64,000 bases of DNA, from IMG/VR virus record IMGVR_UViG_3300027708_000012, positions 248,001 through 312,000 of that record; one strand, given 5' to 3'. Numbering within the stretch: position 1 is the stretch's first letter; the number at the start of each line of letters is the position of its first letter. The translations under genes and the position numbers were made by a program. The notes under the pieces were generated by a model, which was not told the DNA's origin, ran no database searches, and saw nothing but the letters and a program-made list of their open reading frames with translations. Shown one piece after another: positions 9,125-27,556 of this stretch.

Positions 9125-9730
9125 TTACATAGTAGGTCCGTTTCCACTCTTAAATCCTATTGTTCCGCCTTCTGCTTCGATGTTCTTTATAACATCTTCA
9201 AACAGAATTGGGGCAAAATCTGGTGTTTGTTCTACACAAACACAATGATAACGAACATCGTTTTCATCGCTGTATAAAACTTCGCCAGTTCTGGCATCTA
9301 CTCCACGAGCTTTTTTCACACGATTTGCGTGAGTATGTCCATGAATGTTAACGCCAAAACGACCCATTGAATCTGAGTGTAACGGAATGTGGCTAAGGAT
9401 CATACCGTTCATAACGTGATAAGCTCTAAGTTCTCTGAAGTACTGACGATACTCGTCGTCCCTAAAGATATCGTGATTACCACGAATTAAAACTTTGTCG
9501 CCGTTAAGTCTGGATAAGACTTTTAACGCTTTCCGATTAATAACAACATCGCCCAAATGGTAGACCTTGTCAGTGGGTTTTACCCGTTCGTTCCACGCCT
9601 TAATCATTGCTTCGTCCATTTCATCTGGATCAGTCCAGGGACGAAGTTTTGTAACACCGTCGTTACGTGTAAAGCGGCATACACCTGTGTGTCCAAAGTG
9701 CGTGTCGCTTACTAAGAATACACTTGGCAT
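9125..9730 (-). CDS. calcineurin-like metallophosphoesterase
   Basis: SDTHFGH, HLGD, GNHD, HGHTH motifs. Confidence 0.9.
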   Translation of the reverse strand: MPSVFLVSDTHFGHTGVCRFTRNDGVTKLRPWTDPDEMDEAMIKAWNERVKPTDKVYHLGDVVINRKALKVLSRLNGDKVLIRGNHDIFRDDEYRQYFRELRAYHVMNGMILSHIPLHSDSMGRFGVNIHGHTHANRVKKARGVDARTGEVLYSDENDVRYHCVCVEQTPDFAPILFEDVIKNIEAEGGTIGFKSGNGPTM

Positions 9731-9745
9731 ATTCGCCTCCTTTCA

Positions 9746-9919
9746 TTAATAAGTTTCTTTTACAATATTGTACTCGCTAGCTGGCCACTTGGCTTTAAAT
9801 TCATCAGTCTTAACATAATCGTTAAATGATTTGGCATCAAAAAACACTTTGTGAAACTCTGTTTTCATTGAACCTTTTTTGGTTACTGTTAAGTAAACCG
9901 ATTTTGCTTTGCCAGCCAT
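9746..9919 (-). CDS. small hypothetical protein (57 aa, MAGKAKSVYL...)
   Basis: Hand-translated ORF below track cutoff, with GAAAGG RBS and upstream sigma70 promoter. Confidence 0.65.
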   Translation of the reverse strand: MAGKAKSVYLTVTKKGSMKTEFHKVFFDAKSFNDYVKTDEFKAKWPASEYNIVKETY

Positions 9920-9945
9920 TGAGTACCTTTCTTGTTTAAGTAGTT

Positions 9946-9974
9946 ATTATACTACTTATTCCGCAATCAGTCAA
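9946..9974 (-). promoter_or_regulatory. sigma70 promoter
   Basis: TTGACT-17 nt-TATAAT. Confidence 0.75.
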
Positions 9975-10446
9975 CCGATCTAAATGTGCGCCAATCGTCG
10001 AGATTTGGCTTTTCATCTGCATCGTAAGTCCAACCTAACACTTTCATCATGCGATGCTTGACTAGCAAGTTAGGACTGCGGAAACGTTCTGTATCATCAA
10101 AGCCCATCATGACGCCTACTTCACAAACTGCACCCGAGCGACAAATACCAGCGTAGCAATGCACAACCACATTCATTCGATTAGCCAATGCATGTTGTAA
10201 CAACCTAACAAGCTCTGCGGCCTGTTCATGACTACATTTCATTTCTTCCTCAAGAACTTCGTCCTTTTCTTCTACATCCAAAAACTCAAAGTTGTGAACT
10301 TCTTTGAACTGATGTTTTGGAACAGGCCGCCAGCTTGCCGGATCGACAATGCTGATCAACATACTATTAGGGCCAGCATCGTGATGAAATCCAATTGGGA
10401 TATCACTTGCAGCTACGTTTTCAATCCAAGGCATTATACTCTCCAA
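9967..10446 (-). CDS. protein-tyrosine / dual-specificity phosphatase-like
   Basis: HCYAGICRS (CX5R) active-site loop. Confidence 0.8.
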   Translation of the reverse strand: MESIMPWIENVAASDIPIGFHHDAGPNSMLISIVDPASWRPVPKHQFKEVHNFEFLDVEEKDEVLEEEMKCSHEQAAELVRLLQHALANRMNVVVHCYAGICRSGAVCEVGVMMGFDDTERFRSPNLLVKHRMMKVLGWTYDADEKPNLDDWRTFRSVD

Positions 10447-10895
10447 ATTTCTTTGAAACCTTCATCTTCAGTTGGCATTTCAAAATTATCAATCATTCCT
10501 TGTACGATATCCCAAGGCACTTCTTTACCTGGCCGACTAGCCAAACGCTCTTTCAATATTTCAATATCAGGTGTAGTAAACACTACAGCGATATGCTCGT
10601 AGTCTGGAAGCATATTAAACTTACGAGTACGGCTAGCGATAGTAGTGCTAGTTTGATCCCAAAATATAGTATGACCCAAAGTACGGGCTCTCACAACCTG
10701 TTCAGCCATTAAATTAACTGCGGTAGGCATATAATCTTTAAACACTTCTGAATAAGTCTTACCTTGTGATCTTGCATAGTCCTCTACAAACGCATCGGTC
10801 GAAACTACTGTTAAGCCCAATGCCCAGTCTTGGTTTTTAATCCAAGTACTTTTACCTGCGCATGGAACTCCAATTAGTTGATAACACTTTGACAT
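10434..10895 (-). CDS. P-loop kinase (AAA_33 / polynucleotide-kinase-like)
   Basis: Walker A GVPCAGKST, STD, WDQT motifs. Confidence 0.8.
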   Translation of the reverse strand: MSKCYQLIGVPCAGKSTWIKNQDWALGLTVVSTDAFVEDYARSQGKTYSEVFKDYMPTAVNLMAEQVVRARTLGHTIFWDQTSTTIASRTRKFNMLPDYEHIAVVFTTPDIEILKERLASRPGKEVPWDIVQGMIDNFEMPTEDEGFKEIWRV

Positions 10896-11110
10896 TACAT
10901 TAAACCTACCATTCTAAAGTATTCATCATGCGGTACATAAAAATCTGTTTTTGGATCCCAGTACTTACCTTCTTTTGGATCATAGTACAGGATGCGTCCT
11001 GCAACTAAAAATGGTCCTTCGAGTTTAGGCAAAGGACCGTATCCTTGATACAAGTCTGTTGTTTTTCCCAAAATTTTGAATCCCATTTCTCGCTCCTTTT
11101 TTGTTACCAT
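10895..11110 (-). CDS. hypothetical protein
   Basis: 71-aa ORF coupled to the downstream kinase. Confidence 0.7.
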   Translation of the reverse strand: MVTKKEREMGFKILGKTTDLYQGYGPLPKLEGPFLVAGRILYYDPKEGKYWDPKTDFYVPHDEYFRMVGLM

Positions 11111-11190: not shown

Positions 11191-12603
11191 TTATAGTGCG
11201 TAACGATCACTCATTACAGTCTTCAGCATGATGCCTTCTGGAGTGAACTGATCCAAATCAGCGGCTAGCAAGCTAGTCATGATTGATGGACTGAATCCAC
11301 TTACCAATGCGACACCACTCTTGTCTGCCTTAACAGGTACGTTGTCTGAACTGTTTAGGTTCCAGAAAACAATCTGTGGCACAGTGTATCCTGCATCTGC
11401 AAACTTGCGTTCGATCATTTGCATTGCTGTGTCATCGTAATGAGCACATTGGTTAAACTGCATGTCTGACAAGATTAGCAACATGCCAGGCATGTCGCTA
11501 GCTGGTACTGAACCCTTAACCGCAACGTCTAGGATCTTGTCCATAGCCGCATGCAAGTTAGTGCTCATGTCCCAATCGCTACGAGACATTTGAGTAACCT
11601 TTTCAACAATGTTACCCTTTAGAGTAACAAGTTGTGGCTTGTCTGAGAAAGTCAAGAATGTGTCCTTGAACACGCCCTTGTTCTTATCTGCTAGGTACAA
11701 GCCCAAGCTGATTGAAATGTCCATGCAAGTTACATTAGAGTTCTTTCCTGCTGGGCAAGACATAGAACCACTAACGTCTACGATTGGCATGATGCTAGCA
11801 TCTCCAACGTAGTTTGGCAAGCTATCCCATTGTGCGATAACATGACTAGTTTCAGTCATATCCATCTTAGCACGATAGTGCCCAATCACACCCTTCAACA
11901 CATCATGTGGGAAGATTGCGCTGGCGTTAACCTTAACAGTCTTATCACCACTTACCAACTTGGCAACATACTCAGCGAACGCTGGGCTGTGACGGTTGAA
12001 AGCCTTCTTGTAGATTCGAGAAGCTACAGAAGGAACGTGACTGAAGTTGATGTTATCCCAATCTCCTGCACACATTTGGGTTTCAACAACCTTTGTAAGA
12101 GCTACAAGACTCTTACGGTATTGCTTTGGAGTCATGCCAAAGAAGGCACGAACTTCAGCGGCAATTTGCCCCTTACGAGGAGTCCACTTTGCGGCCAAAC
12201 CGTTATTAGCACGTAGGGCATCGCCCAACATGGTATAAGCGGCTGACTTTAGAACTGGGTCTTGGAAGACAAAGATGTCATCCCAACGACCAACTTCTGG
12301 GATCTTCTTTAGAAGAGCCAAAGCGGCGTCTGGGTCACGCTTTTCTAGATGAACTAGAATATCGCGGAACAGTTGACGTTCACCTGCACCACCGCGGACA
12401 TCACGTGCCCATTGTGCGATGCGTAGTGCAACGTCTTGGTTTTCCACATAAGCGGCTGTAAAGTCGCCTGTGATGTCCTTACCACGGCTTGCGCCGATAT
12501 TATAGAACAAGTCAACACAAGCCTTAGCTGTTGACTTACGTGCCTTCATACCGTTTTCGGTACGGGCTTCTTGATTTGCCACTGCATTTACAAATGCGTT
12601 CAT
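11191..12603 (-). CDS. DUF2828-family vWA protein (TROVE/Ro60-like architecture)
   Basis: Helical N-terminus with RDVRGGAGER and GRWDD; C-terminal vWA with MIDAS DVSGSM and LSDMQF. Confidence 0.8.
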   Translation of the reverse strand: MNAFVNAVANQEARTENGMKARKSTAKACVDLFYNIGASRGKDITGDFTAAYVENQDVALRIAQWARDVRGGAGERQLFRDILVHLEKRDPDAALALLKKIPEVGRWDDIFVFQDPVLKSAAYTMLGDALRANNGLAAKWTPRKGQIAAEVRAFFGMTPKQYRKSLVALTKVVETQMCAGDWDNINFSHVPSVASRIYKKAFNRHSPAFAEYVAKLVSGDKTVKVNASAIFPHDVLKGVIGHYRAKMDMTETSHVIAQWDSLPNYVGDASIMPIVDVSGSMSCPAGKNSNVTCMDISISLGLYLADKNKGVFKDTFLTFSDKPQLVTLKGNIVEKVTQMSRSDWDMSTNLHAAMDKILDVAVKGSVPASDMPGMLLILSDMQFNQCAHYDDTAMQMIERKFADAGYTVPQIVFWNLNSSDNVPVKADKSGVALVSGFSPSIMTSLLAADLDQFTPEGIMLKTVMSDRYAL

Positions 12604-12614: not shown

Positions 12615-12671
12615 TACAGAATGTGTTGTTTTTCGATATAAGTGAAAAATTAAATTTGCTGTTAACATTCT
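12615..12671 (-). ncRNA. ACAGCAA element A (Ile-UAU anticodon-like loop)
   Basis: Stem AGAAUGU/ACAUUCU, UAACAGCAA, inner hairpin UUUUUC-A-CUUAUAU-C-GAAAAA; abuts the DUF2828 RBS. Confidence 0.65.
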
Positions 12672-12677: not shown

Positions 12678-12834
12678 AACAGGATCGTTTTCTACTTTTT
12701 GTTTTTATCGAGGAGACTTGTCGAAACTCCTCTATCTAATCCTATCATTGCTAATAACCTTCAAAACCCTTTCAGGCTCCAGCTATTAGCATAAGATTAG
12801 CGTTCCATGTAATATGAATTGCTGTACCGATCCT
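12678..12834 (-). ncRNA. ACAGCAA element B (long form)
   Basis: Stem AGGAUCG/CGAUCCU, GUACAGCAA, inner stems GCUAAUAGC/GUUAUUAGC and GAGGAG/CUCCUC. Confidence 0.65.
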
Positions 12835-12910: not shown

Positions 12911-12963
12911 AACAGGATACATTTTTCTTCATTTGCAGTGAAATAAATTGCTGTTAGTATCCT
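12911..12963 (-). ncRNA. ACAGCAA element C (Cys-GCA anticodon-like loop)
   Basis: Stem AGGAUAC/GUAUCCU, UAACAGCAA, inner hairpin UUCA-CUGCAAA-UGAA. Confidence 0.65.
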
Positions 12964-13012
12964 AATTGGGGCGACACAGTTAAGTGAAGCTTCCACCAGC
13001 TAGTTTAGAAAA

Positions 13013-17584: not shown

Positions 17585-17589
17585 AAACT

Positions 17590-18846: not shown

Positions 18847-18857
18847 ATTGTCTTTAT

Positions 18858-18933
18858 TGGTGCCCTCAGTCGGATTCGAACTGACCACCTGCCGCTTACA
18901 AGGCGGCTGCTCTACCAAATGAGCTATAAGGGC
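18858..18933 (-). tRNA. tRNA-Thr(TGT)
   Basis: Cloverleaf, loop CTTGTAA, CCA. Confidence 0.95.
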
Positions 18934-18980
18934 TTTTAATTATTTTACTTATCGTGTAACACGGCCTTGCAAGAAATTTC

Positions 18981-19586: not shown

Positions 19587-19587
19587 T

Positions 19588-19803
19588 TTATGCTATTGTT
19601 GAATCTGTTGCTGTATAAGCATTTGTAGATCTTGCACCGCTGTCTCTTTGCTTAGGTGCAGATTTAATAACAATCTCACTGCATAACTGCGCATCGATCA
19701 TCATATTCTTGTATTGATTGCGTTGCTCTGCTGTAGAGCCTTTCATCAATCCAATCATACGTTTTGTAGTCTTACTCAATTTGAATGTCTTACCTGGTTT
19801 CAT
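19588..19803 (-). CDS. hypothetical protein
   Basis: 71-aa basic ORF with AAGG RBS. Confidence 0.65.
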   Translation of the reverse strand: MKPGKTFKLSKTTKRMIGLMKGSTAEQRNQYKNMMIDAQLCSEIVIKSAPKQRDSGARSTNAYTATDSTIA

Positions 19804-19821
19804 ATTTTACCTTTTTAAAAT

Positions 19822-19911
19822 TGGCGGAGCGACTGGGAGTCGAACCCAGTCAACGCTATTAAACGTTGTACGGATTAGCAATCCGCTGCCTTACCGTTCG
19901 GCCACCGCTCC
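19822..19911 (-). tRNA. tRNA-Ser(GCT)
   Basis: Long variable arm, loop TTGCTAA, G73, CCA. Confidence 0.95.
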
Positions 19912-19917
19912 TTGTTC

Positions 19918-20061
19918 TTATCTTGTTACCTTACGTACTAATTTATACCAATAATATTTTATGCCACGCCAAGTTGGAAAAAAATTCCAATCAATTGCAT
20001 AACCTACTTCTTTAGGAACATTACAGTACGCTCTATTAATAACATCTTCTTGTTTTGACAT
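19918..20061 (-). CDS. small hypothetical protein (47 aa, MSKQEDVINRAY...)
   Basis: Hand-translated ORF with AAAGGA RBS between two tRNAs. Confidence 0.6.
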   Translation of the reverse strand: MSKQEDVINRAYCNVPKEVGYAIDWNFFPTWRGIKYYWYKLVRKVTR

Positions 20062-20080
20062 ACAGTAATTCCTTTATTAT

Positions 20081-20165
20081 TGGTGCGACTAGCCGGAATC
20101 GAACCGGCACGCCCGAAAGCGAGAGATTTTAAGTCTCTTGTGTCTACCTATTTCACCACAGTCGC
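20081..20165 (-). tRNA. tRNA-Leu(TAA)
   Basis: Long variable arm, loop CTTAAAA, CCA. Confidence 0.95.
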
Positions 20166-20185
20166 GCTATCTCTTGCTTGCTTCT

Positions 20186-20214
20186 ATTATATAGCAACCG
20201 CTATTTAATGTCAA
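20186..20214 (-). promoter_or_regulatory. sigma70 promoter inside tRNA array
   Basis: TTGACA-17-TATAAT. Confidence 0.8.
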
Positions 20215-20223
20215 CACTTATTT

Positions 20224-20299
20224 TGGCGTACCGCGAGAGCCTCGAACTCCCAACCCCTGGTTTTGGAGACCAGTGCTCTGCCAATTGAGCTAGCGATAC
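20224..20299 (-). tRNA. tRNA-Trp(CCA)
   Basis: Cloverleaf, loop CTCCAAA, G73, CCA. Confidence 0.95.
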
Positions 20300-20305
20300 A
20301 ATGTA

Positions 20306-20395
20306 TGGCGGAAACTGTGAGATTCGAACTCACGGAACATTTCTGTTCGACAGTTTTCAAGACTGTTGCAATAAACCGGACTCTGCCAAGTTTCC
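20306..20395 (-). tRNA. tRNA-Ser(TGA)
   Basis: Long variable arm, loop CTTGAAA, CCA. Confidence 0.95.
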
Positions 20396-20399
20396 TTAT

Positions 20400-20474
20400 T
20401 GGTTGCGGGGGAAGGAATCGAACCTCCGGCTTCCAGGTTATGAGCCTGACGGTCTACCGCTGACGTACCCCGCG
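20400..20474 (-). tRNA. tRNA-fMet(CAT), initiator
   Basis: C1:A72 mismatch, loop CTCATAA, CCA. Confidence 0.9.
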
Positions 20475-20480
20475 ATAACT

Positions 20481-20868
20481 TTATTAAAATACATTTAGGC
20501 CTTTTTCATCACGCTGATGGTGGCCGGTCCTTGCTACTCAAACTATGTTCAAGCTAAATGTACTTTATTGAAACACACTGCTGTGGCCACAGACTACCGT
20601 TACCAGCTAGTGAGTTTGGTGCGACCATTCCCAGGCTACTGAATACTCGTCACAATGCGTTTCAATAAAGTGTCTAGCTACTCCCACCACAGGAGCCCTA
20701 GACTGAGCTGTTACTCTGTCCACGTTCTTTTTCCATTTAGACGGGCAATCGTCCCCGCCTTTGTGATTTCTCAAGTCGCCTTAAATGGGCCTTGCGGTAG
20801 ATCCAATGCACCGTACAGTTATCGTTACTGTAATGACGCACTTCCTTAACGTAGAAGTGTAGACGGGT
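20481..20868 (-). ncRNA. block of structured intergenic RNA(s)
   Basis: Stems AAAGUACAUUUAG/CUAAAUGUAUUUU and UUAUUGAAACGCAUUG/CAGUGUGUUUCAAUAA plus several further hairpins; GC-richer than flanks. Confidence 0.55.
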
Positions 20869-20872
20869 TTCT

Positions 20873-20955
20873 TGGTGCCCCAAGCGAGACTCGAACTCGC
20901 ACGCCTAAGCACTGGCTTCTAAGACCAGCGTGTCTACCAATTCCACCATCGGGGC
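20873..20955 (-). tRNA. tRNA-Leu(TAG)
   Basis: Long variable arm, loop CTTAGAA, CCA. Confidence 0.95.
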
Positions 20956-20971
20956 AAATATTTTGTTATTT

Positions 20972-21508
20972 TTAATTTTGAAAATTTTTCAAAATTTCTA
21001 TCATTTCTAAATACGTTAACTTACATTCTTTACTTACAGTATAAGAAAGTAAATACCTGTCCTTTTCATCTAAATTGAATACTCCGTGCGGTATTTGTGC
21101 ATTAAACAGATACCAAGTTTTCGGAGTATAAGGCAAATTTATTATATTACAATTTGTTTTAAGTGCATTTTCTTGAACAGTATCTTCTTCTGTTGCTTTG
21201 AATAAACTAAAACTATTATAGGACTCAAATGTATAATTGAAGTTATACTTGTTGTAAACGTCTGTATGGAAAAAGTAGTAAGTCATTGCAGGGTACTTAT
21301 ACAATTCTAATTTTCCTGAATCTTTTACATAGCTATTTAGGTACGTTAAAAATTTATCTTTTTGCACTAATTCTTGAGAAACACCTTTACCAACCCATTG
21401 AATTTTATCAAATGTTGGAATAAATTTAATATTATTGAGTTTAATGTCTTCAAATATACTATCCATTAAAGGACTTGTAATAGACGTATTATAAAAATAT
21501 TTGTTCAT
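20972..21508 (-). CDS. cupin / oxygenase-like hypothetical protein
   Basis: FHTD...PHG motif. Confidence 0.5.
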   Translation of the reverse strand: MNKYFYNTSITSPLMDSIFEDIKLNNIKFIPTFDKIQWVGKGVSQELVQKDKFLTYLNSYVKDSGKLELYKYPAMTYYFFHTDVYNKYNFNYTFESYNSFSLFKATEEDTVQENALKTNCNIINLPYTPKTWYLFNAQIPHGVFNLDEKDRYLLSYTVSKECKLTYLEMIEILKNFQN

Positions 21509-21525
21509 AATAAATTATTTATATT

Positions 21526-21601
21526 CATATTAAAATACACTAGGAGCAATGCTGTCTTACTATTCGGGCCAAGCCGATGTTGCCTAGTATACTTTAATAT
21601 G
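21526..21601 (-). ncRNA. hairpin RNA downstream of tRNA-Glu
   Basis: 19-bp basal stem CAUAUUAAAGUAUACUAGG/CCUAGUGUAUUUUAAUAUG. Confidence 0.5.
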
Positions 21602-21674
21602 GAGACGCATAGGGGAATCGAACCCCTCTTGCCAGGATGAAAACCTAGTGTCCTAACCGATAGACGAATGCGTC
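21600..21674 (-). tRNA. tRNA-Glu(TTC)
   Basis: Cloverleaf, loop TTTTCAT, CCA. Confidence 0.9.
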
Positions 21675-21726
21675 AAATTGTCTCTTAAATTTTTAATGAA
21701 CATCACTAATTGCTTAGTATGTGACT

Positions 21727-21755
21727 ATTATATAGCCTATGCTAGACAATGTCAA
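21727..21755 (-). promoter_or_regulatory. sigma70 promoter inside tRNA array
   Basis: TTGACA-17-TATAAT. Confidence 0.8.
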
Positions 21756-21774
21756 CAGTTATTTTAAAATATTT

Positions 21775-21849
21775 TGGCCGGCCTTGAGAGGATCGAACTC
21801 CCACCGCTGGTTTCGAAGACCAGAATGATATCCATTTCACCAAAGGCCG
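21775..21849 (-). tRNA. tRNA-Arg(TCG)
   Basis: Cloverleaf, loop CTTCGAA, CCA. Confidence 0.9.
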
Positions 21850-21896
21850 TATGTCACAATTAATTATCTATATTTGTTAATAGACTAATTAATTGT

Positions 21897-22478
21897 ATGG
21901 AAATTAAAGAACTATTCCCCACACTTGTTATGGTTGATTCTAATATTGAATTAGCCAAAAAACTTTTACCTGTTTGTAATTATTTTACAGAAAAAACTAA
22001 AACAAATTGTTTAGGTATTGATAATTTTCCCAGTACATTGAGTAATGAAGAACTCGGTCCTGAAGTTAATAGTCACCCTGTTGTACGCGAAGCTTTTGAA
22101 TATATTATCAATAGTTGTCTAATTCCTTTTGAAAAACATAGAGGATTGGAAGCTAAAGGCATGTTACGACCTTATGGGTTTTTCAGTTCAATGGAACAAA
22201 ATTCACATTGTATTAATCATATACATCTAGAATGTAGATATTCTGGAATTATATATTTAGAAATTGGCCCAGCTGTGCCACCGTTGGTGTTTCACGATCC
22301 TCGACCGCATATTGATTTTATCAGATACAATATCGAAACACCTGGTCCTTATAACAATCAAGTATATTTTGAACAACCTGTTGTGGGTAAAATATTACTT
22401 TGGGATAGTTGGATACATCATAGTATTCCTATGAAACTTACAACTGATCCAAGAAAGACGTTTGTCTTCAATTTGTAA
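21897..22478 (+). CDS. 2OG-Fe(II) oxygenase (TIGR02466-like)
   Basis: NHIH..YSGIIY, WDSWIHHS, RKTFVFN. Confidence 0.75.
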   Translation: MEIKELFPTLVMVDSNIELAKKLLPVCNYFTEKTKTNCLGIDNFPSTLSNEELGPEVNSHPVVREAFEYIINSCLIPFEKHRGLEAKGMLRPYGFFSSMEQNSHCINHIHLECRYSGIIYLEIGPAVPPLVFHDPRPHIDFIRYNIETPGPYNNQVYFEQPVVGKILLWDSWIHHSIPMKLTTDPRKTFVFNL

Positions 22479-22479
22479 T

Positions 22480-22554
22480 TGGCCCGGCCACCAGGAATCG
22501 AACCTGGATCTATAGCTTAGAAGGCTACTGCACTATCCATTGTGCTATGGCCAG
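22480..22554 (-). tRNA. tRNA-Arg(TCT)
   Basis: Cloverleaf, loop CTTCTAA, CCA. Confidence 0.95.
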
Positions 22555-22563
22555 TAAGTGTAC

Positions 22564-22592
22564 ATTATACAGCTATTTTACAAATAAGTCAA
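22564..22592 (-). promoter_or_regulatory. sigma70 promoter inside tRNA array
   Basis: TTGACT-17-TATAAT. Confidence 0.75.
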
Positions 22593-22610
22593 TCGCTATT
22601 GGTAATTATT

Positions 22611-22684
22611 TGGAGCGGGTAGCGAGAATCGAACTCGCGAATAAACCTTGGCAAGGTTTCAGGTTACCATTACATCATACCCGC
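22611..22684 (-). tRNA. tRNA-Gly(GCC)
   Basis: Cloverleaf, loop TTGCCAA, U73, CCA. Confidence 0.9.
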
Positions 22685-22689
22685 ATAAA

Positions 22690-22943
22690 GATATTAGTAG
22701 AAAACACCAAGAGTTTTGGTCCCTGTCAGGGAAACATTGGCCACCCGCGGTTTACAGCCGCGCTCTATTAGTCTAGCAAACATGGAGCAAATTGCACAGC
22801 TAAGAATCTCCCAGACTGTAAATCCTGATTCTCTCAATGCTGGCTCACATACAGTTTATAACTGTCCTTTCTCCGCAACTTTCCGGGTTACAAATACTTG
22901 TCTTTACAGAATGCTTATATGCCTTGTGTCTTCTACTAATGTC
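22690..22943 (-). ncRNA. ~254-nt stem-enclosed RNA with a Tyr anticodon-like stem-loop
   Basis: 17/18-bp basal stem; CGCGG-CUGUAAA-CCGCG at 22746-22762. Confidence 0.55.
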
Positions 22944-22944
22944 T

Positions 22945-23487
22945 TTATTTAATACCAATTATCATGTACCGAGTGAAACTCCAGTCGGGATAATTGAAAT
23001 CCATTGTACCTTTGTACAATACTTCTTCTAATTTATATTTTTCTTCAAAATCTTCCAAATCTATAGCATTACCAAAATGGTCATCGTGTACTAGGTCGTT
23101 GCCTTGTAGGATAACTCTGGTCCCTGGAGAAATCATATCAAACCATGCCATTTGTTCGAAATGTTCTGTACTAGTGTTTATGATTAAATCAGGATTACCG
23201 GGTAACGGATAATTGCAGTCAGCGGTATGTGCTTTAAATTTCCATTCTTTAAAAACCCAGTTGTTGTTAATCATATCTGCAATAGGTTCGCACGACTTGT
23301 CTTGGTCAAAACTTTCAATACGATCAACTTGAAACTGTTCTCTACTTAACAACAAGAAGCCCAGTACACCGTACCACCCACCATATATATGAGTTAGTTT
23401 GCTAGACCAATTTAATTTTTCAAGCTCGCGACAAAGCCAAAGTTTACTATCTATTTGTCCATTTGAAAACGCATCTTTATTAAACAT
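22945..23487 (-). CDS. SAM-dependent methyltransferase-like phage protein
   Basis: IYGGWYG glycine loop, SFDQD, INTSTEH; start at MFNKDAF. Confidence 0.6.
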   Translation of the reverse strand: MFNKDAFSNGQIDSKLWLCRELEKLNWSSKLTHIYGGWYGVLGFLLLSREQFQVDRIESFDQDKSCEPIADMINNNWVFKEWKFKAHTADCNYPLPGNPDLIINTSTEHFEQMAWFDMISPGTRVILQGNDLVHDDHFGNAIDLEDFEEKYKLEEVLYKGTMDFNYPDWSFTRYMIIGIK

Positions 23488-23515
23488 AAAAGTATGTATG
23501 CTTGTACTAAGTTGG

Positions 23516-24175
23516 TCACTGTATATCTGGCTGATGTACTTCAAATGTACGACTAAAGACTTTTGACCAATAACCGGTTGATGGAACCATAATCCAAATT
23601 TTAGAGTTTGCGGGAACAATAAGTGTTCTGGGTAATTCGAAACGAACAGTAGCAATTGCTTGGACAACTCCTAAATGTTTGTGATTAAAATCATCACCTA
23701 CTAGTAGTGTATTTTCACTTGAAAATTTTCTTATATCTTTTAAGACACTATCTAAAGAATGATTGGCATCTATAAAAACTAGGTCAAATTCTTTAGTTAA
23801 TTCATAATCTACACTAGATGCAACATTTATTTTAATTTGATTAGCAATTCTAGGTGTTAAGCAATATCGAAATGCATCTAGCCAACTATTTGAATTGGCC
23901 ATTATATTTTTAATTTTATTTTTGTAATCAATATGACCGTTTAAATATTTAGAATCTGTAATATCCTTAGTATATTCTTTATCAATTTGAAATATGTCTA
24001 CTACTTCCAACTTTGCACTAGAAGGTTTTCCATAATATAATGCAGATGTTGATCTTCCAAGGAAACAACCAACTTCTAATATATTTCCGTTTTCAGGAAC
24101 ATATGAAGCAAGTCGATTCAAAATTTCTAAATCAGTAACTGACATCCATCCTGGTATATTTAAATCATATTTCAT
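23516..24175 (-). CDS. class I SAM-dependent methyltransferase
   Basis: LEVGCFLGRST, FIDANH, GDDF. Confidence 0.85.
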   Translation of the reverse strand: MKYDLNIPGWMSVTDLEILNRLASYVPENGNILEVGCFLGRSTSALYYGKPSSAKLEVVDIFQIDKEYTKDITDSKYLNGHIDYKNKIKNIMANSNSWLDAFRYCLTPRIANQIKINVASSVDYELTKEFDLVFIDANHSLDSVLKDIRKFSSENTLLVGDDFNHKHLGVVQAIATVRFELPRTLIVPANSKIWIMVPSTGYWSKVFSRTFEVHQPDIQ

Positions 24176-24179
24176 CTAT

Positions 24180-24187
24180 TATTTATA
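24180..24187 (-). promoter_or_regulatory. T4-type late promoter
   Basis: Exact TATAAATA immediately upstream of the methyltransferase start. Confidence 0.65.
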
Positions 24188-24235
24188 AAGTGTCAGATTG
24201 TTCACCGCACAACCTGACAAAGCGGGGGTCTGTCT

Positions 24236-24311
24236 TGGTACACCCTGTTGGAATCGAACCAACTTCCACGGCTCTTCAGGCCGCCGCTATGACCACATCA
24301 GCTAAAGGTGC
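24236..24311 (-). tRNA. tRNA-Phe(GAA)
   Basis: Cloverleaf, loop CTGAAGA, CCA. Confidence 0.9.
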
Positions 24312-24316
24312 ATATT

Positions 24317-24392
24317 TGGGGTGTCTTACCGGTATCGATCCGGTACTACCGCTTTCACAGAGCAGGGTGCAGGCCACTACACTAAAGACACC
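24317..24392 (-). tRNA. tRNA-His(GTG)
   Basis: 8-bp acceptor with G-1:C73, loop CTGTGAA, T-loop ATCGATA. Confidence 0.9.
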
Positions 24393-24398
24393 ATAGAT

Positions 24399-24473
24399 TG
24401 GTACCGCCACGAGGAATCGAACCTCAATTACCAGTTCCGCAAACTAGTGTATTATCCATTATACGATAGCGAT
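24399..24473 (-). tRNA. tRNA-Arg(GCG)
   Basis: Cloverleaf, loop TTGCGGA, CCA; rare anticodon. Confidence 0.85.
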
Positions 24474-24479
24474 AAAATT

Positions 24480-24553
24480 TGGCAGGCGCACTAGGGATCG
24501 AACCTAGACTAACAGAGTCAAAGTCTGTTGTGCTACCATTACACAATGCGCCA
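24480..24553 (-). tRNA. tRNA-Gln(TTG)
   Basis: Cloverleaf, loop CTTTGAC, G73, CCA. Confidence 0.95.
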
Positions 24554-24590
24554 ATAATAAAGAATAAATATTGTTTTCTTATATTAAAAT

Positions 24591-25142
24591 ATGACAGAAA
24601 AAGTTTATAAATTAAACCTGCCTTCAATTGAAGAAATAATGCTACCTGGAAAATTTCAAGAACTTTTCCCTAGTAATATTTTTCCTAAAAATAATTCTGA
24701 AATGAGTTTGCTTGATCCAAAAACTTACCTTTTACCAGAAAATTTAAAAATTGGTCATTATGATGTTGATCATAGTATTTTATTTCATAAATCTCACGGT
24801 CAAAAAGGACTAATACATAGTGATACAAACGGTATATGGGCAATTAATTATATAGTTGGAGGGTCCGGTATTCTACATTATTATAACCCAGAAGACTTAG
24901 GTCCTCCAAATTCAAAACCAGATCCAACCGGTGTAGTTAGACCCGTTTGGGGGGATACATCAGCTTTACCCATTAAAACATATTTCATGGATCAAGGAGT
25001 GTATCTTGTTTGTACCGAGGATCCACATTTAGCTGTTGGTAATGGGAATAGGTATTCTTTAAGTATACGAGTACATCCAACACAACAGAAATCATGGCAA
25101 AGTGCTGTTGATTTTTTTCGGCCGTTCATTGAATTTTGGTAG
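24591..25142 (+). CDS. cupin / oxygenase-like hypothetical protein
   Basis: IHSD...PHLA...RYSLSIR. Confidence 0.5.
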   Translation: MTEKVYKLNLPSIEEIMLPGKFQELFPSNIFPKNNSEMSLLDPKTYLLPENLKIGHYDVDHSILFHKSHGQKGLIHSDTNGIWAINYIVGGSGILHYYNPEDLGPPNSKPDPTGVVRPVWGDTSALPIKTYFMDQGVYLVCTEDPHLAVGNGNRYSLSIRVHPTQQKSWQSAVDFFRPFIEFW

Positions 25143-25212
25143 TAACGGTCGGACTCGAACCGACGATAAACACCGTATGAAGGTGGTGCATTAGCCACTA
25201 TGCTACGTTACC
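25137..25212 (-). tRNA. tRNA-Met(CAT), probably elongator
   Basis: Acceptor GGTAACG resembles elongator Met; loop TTCATAC; Ile2 identity not excluded. Confidence 0.85.
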
Positions 25213-25453
25213 ATAAGGATAACAACTAAGATGCGCCACCATCGTTATTGGCGCCATTCACCTGTTTATACAAGGTCGACCAGGACTCGGTACGTCACTT
25301 GGGATTCATCCAGTTGATACGCCACCTGTATACCTCCACCGTTCGACGGCGATAAGTCGGGAATCGAACCCGCAACCTTTTACTACCTCGGTCCTTCGAA
25401 GAAACCTTATTAGCATGACTTCACTTGCTGACACTTAATTGTTATTCTTATGG
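25211..25453 (-). ncRNA. ~243-nt stem-enclosed RNA between tRNA-Lys and tRNA-Met
   Basis: 19/20-bp basal stem; internal T-arm-like GCGGG-UUCGAUU-CCCG. Confidence 0.55.
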
Positions 25454-25526
25454 TAGGACTGCCCGGACTCGAACCGGGAATTGACGGATTAAAAGTCCGC
25501 TGTGATTACCATTTCACCACAATCCC
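25451..25526 (-). tRNA. tRNA-Lys(TTT)
   Basis: Cloverleaf, loop CTTTTAA, CCA. Confidence 0.95.
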
Positions 25527-25530
25527 ATAT

Positions 25531-25606
25531 TGGTCCACTCAGTCGGATTCGAACCGACACCTCATTGATTAAGAGTCAAGTGCGCTACCATTAACGCTAC
25601 GAGTGG
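25531..25606 (-). tRNA. tRNA-Lys(CTT)
   Basis: Cloverleaf, loop CTCTTAA, CCA. Confidence 0.95.
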
Positions 25607-25667
25607 TTGGTCGTAATTAAATTGATTTAATGTGCCAACCAAGACCAATACGGGGTCAAGATTGACA

Positions 25668-25688
25668 CTAACGTTTAGCACGTTTCAT
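25668..25688 (-). other. minigene MKRAKR* with strong RBS
   Basis: AAAGGAGAACGAC-ATG AAA CGT GCT AAA CGT TAG. Confidence 0.45.
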
Positions 25689-25717
25689 GTCGTTCTCCTT
25701 TGAACATTAATTAAAAA

Positions 25718-25781
25718 AACAGGATGCATTTTTACTGGTTAGATTAAAAGTCTAGTGTAATAAATTTGCTGTTAGCATCCT
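25718..25781 (-). ncRNA. ACAGCAA element D (Lys-UUU anticodon-like loop)
   Basis: Stem AGGAUGC/GCAUCCU, UAACAGCAA, inner hairpin UAGA-CUUUUAA-UCUA. Confidence 0.7.
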
Positions 25782-25785
25782 AAAC

Positions 25786-25877
25786 TGGTACCCCCGGCGG
25801 GAATCGAACCCACATTAACCAATTATCTGTTGCATACGGGATATAAATCCGCTGTTTTACCATTAAACTACAGGGGC
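25786..25877 (-). tRNA. tRNA-Ile(TAT) with 22-nt variable region
   Basis: Acceptor GCCCCTG/CGGGGGT, loop TTTATAT, A31:C39 mismatch, CCA. Confidence 0.75.
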
Positions 25878-25881
25878 ATAT

Positions 25882-25956
25882 TGGTACTCCGAACGGGTTT
25901 CGATCCCGCTTCTTCGCCTTGAAAGGGCAACGTTCTAGCCAGTAAACTACCGGAGT
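25882..25956 (-). tRNA. tRNA-Glu(TTC), second copy
   Basis: Loop CTTTCAA, T-loop ATCGAAA, CCA. Confidence 0.85.
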
Positions 25957-25963
25957 ATAAAAT

Positions 25964-26038
25964 TGGTAGCCAATGATGGGAACGATCCATCGACCCTCGC
26001 CTTATCAAGACGATGCTCTACCACTGAGCTAATTGGCT
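25964..26038 (-). tRNA. tRNA-Ile(GAT)
   Basis: Loop TTGATAA, T-loop ATCGTTC, CCA. Confidence 0.9.
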
Positions 26039-26043
26039 ATAAT

Positions 26044-26119
26044 TGGTGGAGAAGAGGGGGATCGAACCCCTGACCTTCTGCTTGCAAAGCAGTTGCTCTC
26101 CCAGCTGAGCTACATCCCC
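26044..26119 (-). tRNA. tRNA-Ala(TGC)
   Basis: G3:U70, loop TTTGCAA, CCA. Confidence 0.95.
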
Positions 26120-26135
26120 AAAAGATTTTAGTGAT

Positions 26136-26807
26136 TCACCAAAAAATTATTCCACTATCATTTTGTAGATTAACATGCATTTGCATTGTTAACCTCATAT
26201 CGTTCGAATCTGATAATGAAAATGGTGCAATACTATGTACTAATTTAGATGGCCACATTGCCATCATACCTTGTGTATAACAGAATTCCTCGTCAGTATC
26301 TACCTGATAATTTCTAGGAATTTTTCCTATTGTGTTATCATATAACAATGATCCACCACTGTTTGGCAATACAATAGGAATTATAATTGATTCTAATTTT
26401 CCAGGATTTAATAAATCTTTTAATTTTGGAAATTGATCTATATGAAAATTAACATATGGAAATTTAACATTTCTGTTTCCAATATTATTTAAAAATACAT
26501 GGAATCCTGGAAATTGTAAATTAGGCGAATAATTTATAGGAATATTATAATAAGATGAAAGTTTATTTTTTATTTTATCATAATAATAAGAAAAATGTTC
26601 TAACATTATTTCGTTATTAGCCGTTATCTCTTTTTCGGAAAAATGAAAAGTATACGCTCCTGGTGGAAGTACACTAGAAAATACTGTTGGATTGATATGT
26701 TTTTCTCTTACACTTTTCCAATGAGATTTTAACATAAAAACTTTTGTTTTTATATCATCTAATTCAGATTGATCGAAAAAATTATTATCAATAACAACAG
26801 GTTTCAT
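26136..26807 (-). CDS. 2OG-Fe(II) oxygenase-like protein
   Basis: FHID...VHSI...RLTMQMH. Confidence 0.65.
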   Translation of the reverse strand: MKPVVIDNNFFDQSELDDIKTKVFMLKSHWKSVREKHINPTVFSSVLPPGAYTFHFSEKEITANNEIMLEHFSYYYDKIKNKLSSYYNIPINYSPNLQFPGFHVFLNNIGNRNVKFPYVNFHIDQFPKLKDLLNPGKLESIIIPIVLPNSGGSLLYDNTIGKIPRNYQVDTDEEFCYTQGMMAMWPSKLVHSIAPFSLSDSNDMRLTMQMHVNLQNDSGIIFW

Positions 26808-26811
26808 TTTA

Positions 26812-26819
26812 TATTTATA
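26812..26819 (-). promoter_or_regulatory. T4-type late promoter
   Basis: Exact TATAAATA just upstream of the 26807 start. Confidence 0.65.
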
Positions 26820-26820
26820 C

Positions 26821-26896
26821 TGGCTCCCCAGCGTGGGATCGAACCACGGACACCTTGATTAACAGTCAAGTGCAACTACCGCTGTGCTACTGGGGA
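26821..26896 (-). tRNA. tRNA-Asn(GTT)
   Basis: Cloverleaf, loop CTGTTAA, G73, CCA. Confidence 0.95.
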
Positions 26897-27556
26897 ATAA
26901 AATTTGTTCTTTTTACTTATGACTAGGCGACTTGGCCAGTCTACAGTTTTGTTATATAAATTCATTGTTGTTGAGTTTATACTTACAATACTAAGATACG
27001 GATCTATTGATGACACAATGTCTTCAACAGATAATTGATGTGGTATGATACTTAAATTTAAAGCAGACAATTTTAATAATGTGTCAGTTGACATACTTTT
27101 AAAGTCTCTTCCTGAAATGCTTAACCAAATACCGTTAGGTCTAAGCACTCTAGATACAGATTTAGCAAATGCATGTCTTAGAGAACTATCTAAATCGTAT
27201 GTATGAAAACAGCCTCGATCTACTACGTAGTCAAAACTATTTTCTTCAAAACTATTTTTTAAAATATCAGTTGCTTGCAATTTAATTTTTGCATTTTCTT
27301 TTTTAGAAAGAGCAGAAATAATTGCTACATCAGATATATCTATTGCTGTTACATCTAATCCTCTTTGTTGTAACCAAACAGCATTTACAGGATCAGCGCC
27401 GCAACCTAATTCAAGTACAGTACCGCTAACTATATTTTGTTTAGAAAACCAATCTACAATATTGTGATCTACATCACCTTCCCAAGGATGGCTGGATGCA
27501 TTTGCAAAAATGCTATTCCATTTTTCTGTATTTTCTAAATTATTGTAGTTTGTCAT
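26876..27556 (-). CDS. class I SAM-dependent methyltransferase (TPMT/TehB-like)
   Basis: VLELGCG, IDIS, FDYVVDRGCFH, LRPNG. Confidence 0.85.
   Translation of the reverse strand: MTNYNNLENTEKWNSIFANASSHPWEGDVDHNIVDWFSKQNIVSGTVLELGCGADPVNAVWLQQRGLDVTAIDISDVAIISALSKKENAKIKLQATDILKNSFEENSFDYVVDRGCFHTYDLDSSLRHAFAKSVSRVLRPNGIWLSISGRDFKSMSTDTLLKLSALNLSIIPHQLSVEDIVSSIDPYLSIVSINSTTMNLYNKTVDWPSRLVISKKNKFYSPVAQR

What the first reader, a model, noticed from the sequence alone, without database searches (positions are those of the whole stretch)
25718..25781. Fourth ACAGCAA element, 13 kb from the others, with a Lys(UUU) loop
Seen: same scaffold as A-C, located between tRNA-Ile(UAU) and the Lys tRNAs. 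Its distance from DUF2828 argues for a trans-acting RNA rather than only a 5' UTR motif. Established: tRNA-Lys(UUU) is the PrrC target.
Basis: partly seen in the sequence, partly recalled or inferred. Interest (0 to 1): 0.7.

Follow-up and report, generated by a model that had tools for sequence, protein, structure and literature searches.

The report
Ro-like protein's small RNA, tRNA-Lys mimic
Element D is real: it is one of four genes in this freshwater jumbo phage for small structured RNAs that accompany a Ro60-like RNA-binding protein (DUF2828) across phages and bacteria, it carries a copy of the tRNA-Lys anticodon arm, and it shares the defining features of the 'Class I' RNAs so far reported only from Dictyostelium.

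Summary
On the minus strand, 25718-25784 holds a 7-bp closing helix, the single-stranded motif UAACAGCAA just after its 5' arm, and CUGU after its 3' arm. Inside is a two-helix arm ending in the 7-nt loop CUUUUAA.

The 345-kb phage genome has four such elements. A, B and C lie directly upstream of the DUF2828/DUF7788 gene. D sits in a tRNA array, spaced like a tRNA gene.

The DUF2828 protein models as a Ro60 (TROVE ring plus vWA) fold. The same RNA scaffold lies upstream of DUF2828 homologues in distant phages and in many bacterial phyla: 65 hits on the gene strand against 1 on the opposite strand. In 151 genomes of one bacterial order, my covariance model hit 6 of 9 DUF7788-positive genomes and 0 of 142 negative ones.

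Longer family members score as YrlA (bacterial Y RNA) and carry T- and D-arm mimics. Short ones, D included, give Dictyostelium Class I RNA as the best Rfam match.

Best reading: D is a Y-RNA-like partner of the phage Ro-like protein, cut out of the tRNA transcript, displaying a tRNA-Lys anticodon-arm mimic within an RNA-repair or tRNA-conflict system. Binding, expression and the PrrC-decoy idea remain untested.

The parts
25718..25784 (-). Element D: a small RNA gene of about 62-67 nt. Closing helix P1 is 25781-25775 paired with 25727-25721. The motif UAACAGCAA is 25774-25766. P2 is 25760-25757 paired with 25735-25732. P3 is 25755-25751 paired with 25743-25739. The loop CUUUUAA is 25750-25744. 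CUGU (C = last base of the 3' arm, 25722-25719) is followed by a U-run to 25713.
   Evidence: Sequence; fold. On 29 D-type sequences 91.9% of cells pair, and the covariation score is 0.351 against 0.124 in shuffles (0/500). Model R1 scores it 68.1 bits, but D was in the training set.
12911..12966 (-). Element A: same scaffold. Its inner hairpin has the loop CUGCAAA, which resembles a Cys (GCA) anticodon loop. It starts 62 nt downstream of tRNA-Cys(GCA).
   Evidence: Rfam's Dicty_Class_I model gives 21.9 bits.
12681..12834 (-). Element B: same closing helix and UACAGCAA motif around a 130-nt structured insert. The MFE is -47.6 kcal/mol, z = -5.0.
   Evidence: Its 3' part (12672-12733) stands at depth 150-785 in two of the four lake metatranscriptomes laid (X4, X1).
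12618..12671 (-). Element C: same scaffold with an AGAAUGU/ACAUUCU helix. It ends 14 nt before the DUF2828 start codon, so it may also be part of that mRNA's leader.
   Evidence: Rfam's Dicty_Class_I model gives 25.5 bits, E 0.014. An error-free RNA-library contig spans 12527-12682.
11191..12603 (-). Gene for the 470-aa DUF2828 + DUF7788 protein, a Ro60-like TROVE ring plus a vWA domain with the MIDAS motif D276-x-S278-x-S280. It is the presumed protein partner of the elements.
   Evidence: Pfam. PHROG 850 'RNA-binding protein', E 2.8e-142. AF2 model with pLDDT 91. The top 13 PDB fold matches are all Ro60/TROVE (E 3e-8 to 6e-6, TM 0.39-0.63). Swiss-Prot fold matches are Ro60, p80 and TEP1.
9125..11110 (-). 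Genes downstream on the same strand: a 71-aa ORF (10895-11110), a P-loop AAA_33 / polynucleotide-kinase-like protein (10434-10895), a dual-specificity-phosphatase-like protein (9967-10446) and a metallophosphoesterase (9125-9730). Together they look like RNA-end-healing enzymes.
25786..25877 (-). tRNA(UAU), 92 nt with a long extra arm. Its 3' end is 4 nt upstream of D's closing helix, so its 3' processing would set D's 5' end.
25451..25606 (-). tRNA-Lys(CUU) and tRNA-Lys(UUU), downstream of D. Positions 30-40 of the UUU species are identical to D's hairpin top.

Best explanation
D is a gene for a small structured RNA belonging to a widespread family that I could not find described. These are Y-RNA-like RNAs that accompany the Ro60-like protein DUF2828/DUF7788.

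**Shown**
- A scaffold made of a covarying terminal helix, a single-stranded (U/C)N-ACAGCAA on the 5' strand just above it, a 5' (A/U)AG and a 3' CUGU.
- A variable inner module built from pieces of tRNA: T arm, T plus D arms, or anticodon arm.
- Tight linkage of this scaffold to DUF2828 genes across phages and bacteria.
- A Ro60 fold for DUF2828.
- Linkage of bacterial DUF2828 genes to RtcB and other RNA ligases.

**Inferred**
- D is transcribed with the tRNA array and released by the enzymes that trim the flanking tRNAs.
- The closing helix plus ACAGCAA is the docking site for the Ro-like ring. It occupies the same place in the RNA as the GNCGAA / GGUCCGA Ro-binding motif of YrlA and Y RNAs.
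- The P2-P3 arm shows a tRNA-Lys-type anticodon arm to proteins that handle tRNA anticodon loops.
- The RNP works in the phage's defence of its tRNA pool. It would act with the kinase and phosphatases encoded next to DUF2828, as a tether or gate for repair or clearance of broken tRNAs, possibly also as a bait for anticodon-loop nucleases.
For: **The scaffold and its structure**
- Only four copies exist in the genome, and their helices compensate.
- The D-type structure is kept in 29 sequences. P3 has 3 of 5 pairs changed on both sides, in a set that was not selected on P3 pairing, and G-U pairs fit only this strand.

**Location**
- D-type copies occupy tRNA-like slots in tRNA arrays. The same holds in a Dysosmobacter genome.

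**The protein**
- DUF2828 has the Ro60 fold and a MIDAS motif.

**Linkage of RNA and protein**
- The scaffold lies upstream of homologues that are 43-57% identical in other phages.
- It also lies upstream of homologues that are 33-66% identical in Clostridia, Chloroflexi, Gammaproteobacteria, Verrucomicrobia, Treponema, Bacteroidota and others: 65 hits on the gene strand, 1 on the other.
- An independent genome-level test found R1 hits at E <= 0.001 in 6 of 9 DUF7788-positive genomes and 0 of 142 negative genomes. Every hit near a DUF7788 match (9 of the 11) lies upstream of it, within about 1.8 kb, on its strand. My own Fisher's exact calculation gives about 6e-9.

**Resemblance to Y RNAs**
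- Mid-size members match Rfam YrlA over the full model at 35.7-43.7 bits, E down to 5e-9. ACAGCAA aligns where YrlA has its Ro-binding motif.

**RNA-repair context**
- In Anaerotignum, DUF2828 is followed directly by RtcB and preceded by a WYL regulator. In Dysosmobacter a weak RNA-ligase match (22.6 bits, below Pfam's cut-off of 27) follows. A T4 Rnl1-type ligase lies nearby in a phage relative.
- In the window, a kinase and phosphatases follow DUF2828.

**Expression**
- Lake metatranscriptome contigs hold the DUF2828 5' end, C and part of B.
Against: - No binding data exist. The complex-prediction tool does not fold protein-RNA pairs.
- Expression of D itself is not shown. RNA-library contigs cover it only at depth 3-11, and DNA carry-over cannot be excluded.
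- D does not reach any Rfam gathering score.
- The phage genome (94% complete) has no recognisable Rnl1, Rnl2 or RtcB, so a full repair pathway would need host enzymes.
- P1 pairing in my alignments A1 and A4 is partly by construction, because elements were picked on arm complementarity.
- What the anticodon-arm mimic is for is inference only.
Confidence: 0.6

Rival explanations
1. Stand-alone decoy for an anticodon nuclease. D acts on its own, without the Ro-like protein. It soaks up or is cleaved by a PrrC- or RloC-type host nuclease that targets tRNA-Lys(UUU).
For: - The loop and the two closing pairs are identical to tRNA-Lys(UUU) positions 30-40.
- Once T-loops are set aside, UUU is the commonest anticodon-like triplet in the family's hairpins, in both phage and bacterial sets.
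- The phage carries 29 tRNA genes (28 by ARAGORN plus one further Rfam match) and RNA-end-healing enzymes, which fits a conflict over tRNAs.
Against: - The conserved scaffold (helix, ACAGCAA, CUGU) is unnecessary for a bare decoy, yet it is the most conserved part and tracks DUF2828.
- Positions 34-35 drift among close relatives on the same stem while 32, 33 and 36-38 stay fixed.
- The wobble-base modification that PrrC reads is not known to be made on such a mimic. This point rests on established knowledge of PrrC and was not tested.
Confidence: 0.17
2. Cis-acting signal of the tRNA operon. D would be a terminator, attenuator or processing spacer rather than a functional RNA.
For: - In this phage the closing helix is followed by seven U.
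- D lies between tRNAs and just upstream of a conserved mini-ORF.
Against: - The U-run is not conserved: relatives end in CCUGUUG, CCUGUGA and the like, and the next tRNA often starts about 1-4 nt after CUGU.
- The helix encloses 47 nt, unlike an intrinsic terminator.
- The same scaffold occurs next to DUF2828 genes that have no tRNAs nearby.
Confidence: 0.07
3. Decayed remnant of a tRNA-Lys gene, or a DNA-level site such as a recombination or homing-endonuclease target, with no RNA function.
For: - It sits in a tRNA array and keeps an anticodon arm.
Against: - It has no acceptor, D or T arm (ARAGORN and Rfam).
- Compensatory changes and G-U pairs point to selection on an RNA fold on this strand.
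- The strand bias is 65:1.
- It is conserved from phages to several bacterial phyla.
Confidence: 0.04

Closest known systems
Bacterial and phage Y RNAs of the YrlA type with Ro60 (Rsr); Rfam RF02553; Chen et al. 2014, PMC4201824
   Same: - Small RNAs encoded upstream of, and on the strand of, a Ro60-fold protein, often several in a row from one precursor.
- The 5' and 3' ends pair, and a conserved motif sits on the 5' strand.
- The inner domain mimics tRNA.
- Linked to RtcB and RNA-repair genes.
- Mid-size members of this family score 35.7-43.7 bits against YrlA over the whole model.
   Different: - The protein is DUF2828/DUF7788, not Pfam TROVE.
- The 5'-strand motif is ACAGCAA, not GNCGAA(N)G.
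- All matches fall below YrlA's gathering score of 69.
- D and other short members carry an anticodon-arm mimic instead of the T/D-arm elbow.
- D is 13 kb from the protein gene, inside a tRNA array.
Class I RNAs of dictyostelid social amoebae; Rfam RF01414; Kjellin et al. 2021, PMC7919456
   Same: - Length 42-65 nt.
- A 6-7 bp terminal helix kept by compensatory change.
- An 11-nt motif next to the 5' arm. D has GCUAACAGCAA against CCUUACAGCAA, with all five near-invariant positions (U3, C6, C9, A10, A11) and 9 of 11 identical.
- The exact 11-mer occurs in three bacterial DUF2828-linked elements.
- A conserved 5' G preceded by A (AAG in many relatives and in bacteria) and a 3' CUGU.
- A variable remainder.
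- It is the best Rfam match for A, C and D and for short relatives, at up to 32.4 bits.
   Different: - Scores are below the gathering score of 41.5.
- Class I RNAs are eukaryotic, have their own DUSE promoter, and are reported as absent outside Dictyostelia.
- Their known binder is the RRM protein Rnp1A.
- Whether dictyostelids have a DUF2828 protein could not be checked here.
Phage T4 answer to the PrrC anticodon nuclease (Pnkp plus Rnl1 repair of cleaved tRNA-Lys); established knowledge
   Same: - A phage-encoded kinase and phosphatase set next to the system.
- tRNA-Lys(UUU) is the molecule at stake.
   Different: - T4 uses no RNA mimic and no Ro-like protein.
- No RNA ligase was found in this phage.

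Membership tests
Y RNA / YrlA (partner of Ro60) | Encoded close to, and on the strand of, a Ro60 orthologue | tested here: inconclusive
   The family meets this with a Ro60-fold protein (DUF2828): 65 hits on the gene strand against 1 on the other, most of those inspected within about 1 kb upstream. A, B and C meet it. D itself is 13 kb away. The protein is not a Pfam TROVE member.
Y RNA / YrlA (partner of Ro60) | Helix formed by the 5' and 3' ends | tested here: met
   A 7-bp P1 is present in all four copies, and all 7 pairs change on both sides across 40 sequences. The caveat is that these sequences were chosen on complementarity.
Y RNA / YrlA (partner of Ro60) | Ro-binding motif GNCGAA(N)G or GGUCCGA on the 5' strand | tested here: not met
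   The motif is UAACAGCAA. In the YrlA alignment of L001 it sits at the position of the YrlA motif.
Y RNA / YrlA (partner of Ro60) | tRNA-like domain with T and D arms | tested here: not met
   D has an anticodon-arm-like module only. Relatives L001, L080, L216 and L248 do have T and D arms.
Y RNA / YrlA (partner of Ro60) | Reaches the Rfam gathering score (69 bits) | tested here: not met
   D gives no YrlA hit. The best relatives score 35.7-43.7 bits.
Y RNA / YrlA (partner of Ro60) | Physically bound by the Ro-type protein | not testable with these tools
   Complex prediction does not fold protein-RNA pairs.
Dictyostelium Class I RNA (RF01414) | 42-65 nt with a short terminal stem kept by compensatory change | tested here: met
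   D is 61 nt from arm to arm, and P1 covaries.
Dictyostelium Class I RNA (RF01414) | 11-nt motif next to the 5' arm with U3, C6, C9, A10 and A11 invariant | tested here: met
   D has GCUAACAGCAA, with all five invariant positions present and 9 of 11 identical to CCUUACAGCAA.
Dictyostelium Class I RNA (RF01414) | Conserved ends: 5' AAG and 3' CUGU, with G paired to C | tested here: met
   CUGU is present in all four copies. D begins UAG, while many relatives and the bacterial consensus begin AAG.
Dictyostelium Class I RNA (RF01414) | Reaches the Rfam gathering score (41.5 bits) | tested here: not met
   D scores 17.1, A 21.9 and C 25.5 bits. The best relatives score 32.3-32.4 bits.
Dictyostelium Class I RNA (RF01414) | Upstream DUSE promoter; dictyostelid host | tested here: not met
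   This is a phage genome and D lies inside a tRNA array. DUSE itself was not searched for. Kjellin et al. reported the class as unique to Dictyostelia.
tRNA | Cloverleaf with acceptor, D, anticodon and T arms | tested here: not met
   ARAGORN and Rfam find no tRNA at 25718-25784.
Ro60 / TROVE-vWA proteins (for the partner protein) | HEAT-repeat ring plus a vWA domain with MIDAS | tested here: met
   The fold matches Ro60 of Xenopus, human, Deinococcus and a Thermus phage over about 500 columns. D-x-S-x-S is invariant. At the sequence level only weak vWA-region hits appear (E about 0.1), and Pfam TROVE is not hit.

The most novel reading that the evidence does not exclude
The ACAGCAA-scaffold RNAs are the long-missing RNA partners of the whole DUF2828/DUF7788 branch of Ro60-like proteins, across phages, bacteria and eukaryotes. 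On this reading the dictyostelid Class I RNAs, thought to be a lineage-specific invention tied to multicellularity, are the eukaryotic members of the same RNA family. Their interchangeable inner modules (anticodon arm, T arm, tRNA elbow) would act as baits or sensors that couple the Ro-like ring to attacks on particular tRNAs. D would be the tRNA-Lys version.
Probability: 0.3. Interest if true: 0.9.

Novelty: new variant of a known kind. Interest (0 to 1): 0.8.

Why it matters
**A partner and a task for a large protein family.** DUF2828/DUF7788 has more than 6,000 clusters at 50% identity and is also found in AlphaFold DB entries annotated like plant proteins, yet it has no assigned function. 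A conserved RNA partner plus linkage to RtcB and end-healing enzymes gives it both. It also extends the Ro60-Y RNA principle to a second, much larger branch.

**Pieces of tRNA used as swappable modules.** The family uses parts of tRNA, anticodon arms included, on one scaffold. This is directly testable as a mechanism in phage-host conflicts over tRNAs.

**A link to Dictyostelium Class I RNAs.** A feature-by-feature match makes an open question testable: what do these abundant RNAs bind and do? It also challenges the view that they are unique to social amoebae.

Tried and rejected
**Negative or uninformative searches**
- Rfam at gathering thresholds gives nothing on A-D.
- ARAGORN finds no tRNA inside the 100-260-nt elements.
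- Model R1 run over the window with filters off finds no further copies beyond A, C and D. It misses B because of B's long insert.
- A megablast of the tRNA region against GenBank phages finds no close relative.
- Pfam searches of the phage genome for Rnl1, Rnl2 and RtcB find none. The Rnl1 control rang nowhere, so that particular negative is weak.

- Complex prediction with the protein and D was not folded and gives no evidence either way.

**Weak expression data**
- Metatranscriptome contigs over D are thin (depth 3-11), so they neither show nor exclude expression.

**Whether dictyostelids encode DUF2828/DUF7788 could not be settled**
- The Swiss-Prot fold search holds no DUF2828 member.
- AFDB-cluster rows came without organisms.
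- The Atlas searches and the word-based protein search returned only viral or near relatives.
- Avesson et al. 2011, which lists the four Class I-binding proteins, is not held. Burroughs and Aravind 2016 is not held either.
- Literature searches for DUF2828, DUF7788, PF11443, and Dictyostelium with Y RNA found no paper linking these RNAs and proteins.

**Ideas considered and dropped**
- That the enrichment of ACAGCAA in the window reflects many elements. Most copies are in coding sequence.
- That the 92-nt tRNA(UAU) is a Leu-type tRNA with a changed anticodon. The alignment does not support it.

Full report
**Setting**

The window is bases 248001-312000 of a 345,369-bp virus record with 38% G+C, rated 94% complete. 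Its close relatives are many freshwater IMG/VR contigs, some about 355 kb long. Nearly everything relevant lies on the minus strand. ARAGORN finds 28 tRNA genes and a permuted tmRNA, and Rfam adds one further weak tRNA match.

**1. The observation**

Read on the minus strand, 25784-25713 begins UUU-AGGAUGC-UAACAGCAA and ends GCAUCCU-GUUUUUUU. Between these lies an arm of two short helices capped by the loop CUUUUAA.

- The 5' pattern shared with the three elements near 12.6-13.0 kb has 4 exact matches (one further match with 1 mismatch), against 0.73 expected for matches with up to 1 mismatch.
- Each of the four exact matches has a perfectly complementary 3' arm whose variable positions differ between copies.
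- Strict and relaxed scans of the whole genome find no others above the shuffled background.
- The loop and its two closing pairs (GACUUUUAAUC) equal positions 30-40 of the phage's own tRNA-Lys(UUU).

The finding's coordinates, neighbours and Lys(UUU) loop are all correct.

**2. D is a conserved structured RNA placed like a tRNA**

A pattern scan of IMG/VR and a protein-guided scan gave about 200 loci holding 250 distinct elements with this scaffold. They fall into length classes of about 50-65, 100-135, 155-165 and 200-260 nt.

Twenty-eight distinct D-type relatives align with D. On the three-helix structure, 91.9% of cells pair. The covariation score is 0.351 against 0.124 in shuffles (0 of 500 reach it) and at most 0.054 when partners are slid.

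P1 pairing was a selection criterion, so it is partly by construction. P2 and P3 were not selected on pairing. P3 has three of five pairs changed on both sides, and G-U pairs fit only this strand.

The loop reads C-U-N-N-U-A-A. Positions 32, 33 and 36-38 are fixed or nearly so. Positions 34-35 vary: UUU in about half, and also UCU, UGU, GCU, CUU, AUU and GAU.

In the contigs that show flanking tRNAs, the D-type element sits in a tRNA array. The upstream tRNA ends about 5 nt before the closing helix, and in many the next tRNA starts about 1-4 nt after CUGU. That is the spacing of tRNA genes among themselves, so release by tRNA-processing enzymes is the natural inference.

**3. The protein next to A-C is Ro60-like**

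ORF 11191-12603 matches Pfam DUF7788 and DUF2828 and PHROG 850, 'RNA-binding protein'. The family is large, with 6,322 clusters at 50% identity.

- An AlphaFold model built on 60 homologues has pLDDT 91.
- Its best 13 PDB matches are all Ro60/TROVE structures: Xenopus, human, Deinococcus Rsr and Thermus phage phiLo. E-values run from 3e-8 to 6e-6 and TM-scores reach 0.63, over about 500 columns.
- The Swiss-Prot models give Ro60 from five species, Tetrahymena p80 and TEP1.
- A D-x-S-x-S MIDAS motif is invariant.

Downstream on the same strand lie a P-loop kinase related to polynucleotide kinases, a dual-specificity-type phosphatase and a metallophosphoesterase.

**4. The scaffold follows DUF2828 far beyond this phage**

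Phage contigs whose DUF2828 proteins are only 57% and 43% identical carry several scaffold elements just upstream. There the modules read like tRNA T arms and D arms.

A scan of one genome per prokaryotic species returned 80 loci with homologues of 33-66% identity. They come from Clostridia, Chloroflexi, Gammaproteobacteria, Verrucomicrobia, Treponema, Bacteroidota, Izemoplasma and a Woesearchaeota MAG.

- With identical criteria on both strands, the scaffold occurs 65 times on the gene strand and once on the other. Most of those I inspected lie within about 1 kb upstream.
- The bacterial 5' consensus is AAAG and the 3' end is UGU.

I built a covariance model (R1) from 40 short elements and ran it on 151 genomes drawn from one bacterial order.

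- It hit 6 genomes at E <= 0.001. All 6 are among the 9 that have DUF7788, and none is among the 142 that lack it. One weak hit at E 0.007 fell in a negative genome.
- Nine of the 11 hits at E <= 0.001 lie upstream of a DUF7788 match, on its strand, about 50 nt to 1.8 kb from it; the other two, both in G001, are 2.4 kb and 38 kb away.
- My own Fisher's exact calculation gives about 6e-9.

In Dysosmobacter, two further elements lie 38 kb from the protein gene, directly after a tRNA inside an 11-tRNA array. That matches D's situation.

In Anaerotignum, DUF2828 is preceded by a WYL regulator and followed by RtcB, which is interrupted by a group II intron. In Dysosmobacter a weak RNA-ligase match (22.6 bits, below Pfam's cut-off of 27) follows. 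A phage relative has a T4 Rnl1-type ligase nearby. This mirrors the rsr-yrlBA-rtcBA arrangement of Salmonella (PMC4201824; PMC7790460).

**5. What Rfam recognises**

Nothing reaches a gathering score on A-D. With E-value thresholds:

- Mid-size scaffold elements match YrlA over the whole model: L001 43.7 bits (E 9e-7, or 5e-9 locally), L080 39.5, L216 37.7 and L248 35.7. The T arm, 'acceptor' stem and D arm align, and ACAGCAA lies where YrlA has its GNCGAA Ro-binding motif.
- Short elements match only Dicty_Class_I_RNA: C 25.5 bits (E 0.014), A 21.9, D 17.1, L079 32.3 (E 0.015 in a 27-kb search), L233 32.4, L042 28.0 and L223 28.1.

The published definition of Class I RNAs (PMC7919456) is:

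- 42-65 nt;
- a 6-bp terminal stem kept by compensation;
- an 11-nt motif beside the 5' arm with U3, C6, C9, A10 and A11 nearly invariant;
- a 5' AAG and a 3' CUGU;
- a variable rest.

D meets each sequence and structure criterion, with 9 of 11 motif positions identical. Three bacterial elements carry the exact 11-mer.

That paper reports the class as absent outside Dictyostelia. It does not appear to have searched phages or a broad set of bacteria; the text found mentions only Myxococcus xanthus. I found no paper connecting Class I RNAs with Ro60-type proteins. I could not establish whether dictyostelids encode DUF2828.

**6. Modules**

Hairpins with at least 4 bp and a 7-nt loop inside the elements fit the Y-U-N-N-N-R-N pattern three times more often than chance: 20-21% against 6%. 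T-loops make up part of this. Setting those aside, UUU is the commonest anticodon-like triplet in both the phage and the bacterial sets.

In the window, A's loop CUGCAAA resembles a Cys anticodon loop, and A lies beside tRNA-Cys.

**7. Expression**

Lake metatranscriptome contigs hold this lineage's DUF2828 5' end at depths of tens to hundreds. One error-free contig spans C and the start of the gene. The 3' part of B stands at depth 150-785 in two of the four runs (X4, X1).

Over D the depth is only 3-11. Such libraries capture small structured RNAs poorly and may contain DNA, so this neither shows nor excludes expression of D.

**8. Mechanism**

What is shown:

- a conserved RNA scaffold;
- its tight linkage to a Ro60-fold protein;
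- tRNA-piece modules;
- placement in tRNA arrays;
- an RNA-ligase and end-healing gene context.

What is inferred, by analogy with Ro60-Y RNA (where Ro60 contacts the 5' strand of the terminal helix and the rest of the Y RNA gates the ring or tethers other enzymes):

- the Ro-like ring binds P1 plus ACAGCAA;
- D's anticodon-arm mimic engages proteins that act on tRNA anticodon loops;
- the RNP serves repair or clearance of damaged tRNA during infection.

Whether the mimic is a bait for an anticodon nuclease, a sensor that is itself cut, or a tether cannot be decided here. The drift at positions 34-35 speaks against a strict tRNA-Lys(UUU)-specific decoy. The fixed U36-A37-A38 suggests recognition of the loop frame rather than the anticodon.

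**9. Verdict**

- The trans-acting reading is supported.
- The PrrC idea is untested.
- The element belongs to a new, widespread variant of the Y-RNA/Ro60 kind.
- An unexpected and testable tie to Dictyostelium Class I RNAs emerged.

Noticed in passing
window 25668-25688 (-): A conserved mini-ORF with a strong Shine-Dalgarno site (AAAGGAG, then a 6-nt spacer, then ATG) encodes MKRAKR*. Seven related contigs keep it, with synonymous and conservative changes (MKRGKR, MKRSGKR, MKRSAKR, MKRKSAKL). It always lies about 60-90 nt upstream of the tRNA-Lys(CUU)/tRNA-Lys(UUU) pair, even where D is separated from it by another tRNA. This looks like a Lys/Arg-rich leader peptide. RNA-library contigs cover it at depth 65-110 in run X4.
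   Followed up: partly
window 25786-25877 (-): The tRNA with anticodon UAU is 92 nt long and has a 22-nt extra arm containing CAACAGAUAA, which loosely recalls the scaffold motif. It does not align as a Leu- or Ser-type tRNA. In L223 (796-904) a 109-nt tRNA-like gene carries an insert containing UCACAGCAAG.
   Followed up: partly
window 16036-27556: The tRNA array is interspersed with at least three paralogous 2OG-Fe(II) oxygenase genes (21897-22478 on the plus strand; 18981-19586 and 17672-18241 on the minus strand), plus a fourth weak match below Pfam's cut-off (16036-16605 on the minus strand), and two SAM-methyltransferase genes (26876-27556 and 23516-24175).
   Followed up: no
window 35032-35497 (-): A phage-encoded permuted (two-piece type) tmRNA that matches the betaproteobacterial model. 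This hints at a betaproteobacterial freshwater host.
   Followed up: no
L122-L163, about 10-290 nt upstream of the DUF2828 start: Many close relatives carry a further scaffold element of about 200-260 nt between the B-type and C-type elements. This phage lacks it, and its insert was not analysed.
   Followed up: no
L223 1007-1068: A freshwater-1 RNA (Rfam RF02979, 82.7 bits, above the gathering score) sits in the same RNA-gene array upstream of a DUF2828 gene, in a contig binned as Micavibrio. The function of freshwater-1 is unknown, and this gives it a genomic context.
   Followed up: no
window 12672-12738 (-): The 3' part of element B includes the hairpin GAGGAG...CUCCUC. It recurs in many metatranscriptome contigs that diverge on both sides, at much higher depth than its surroundings. 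It therefore looks like a separately conserved and abundant sub-element.
   Followed up: no
L280 4450-7271: In Anaerotignum lactatifermentans, the RtcB gene directly after DUF2828 is interrupted by a group II intron encoding a reverse transcriptase, a maturase and an HNH domain.
   Followed up: no
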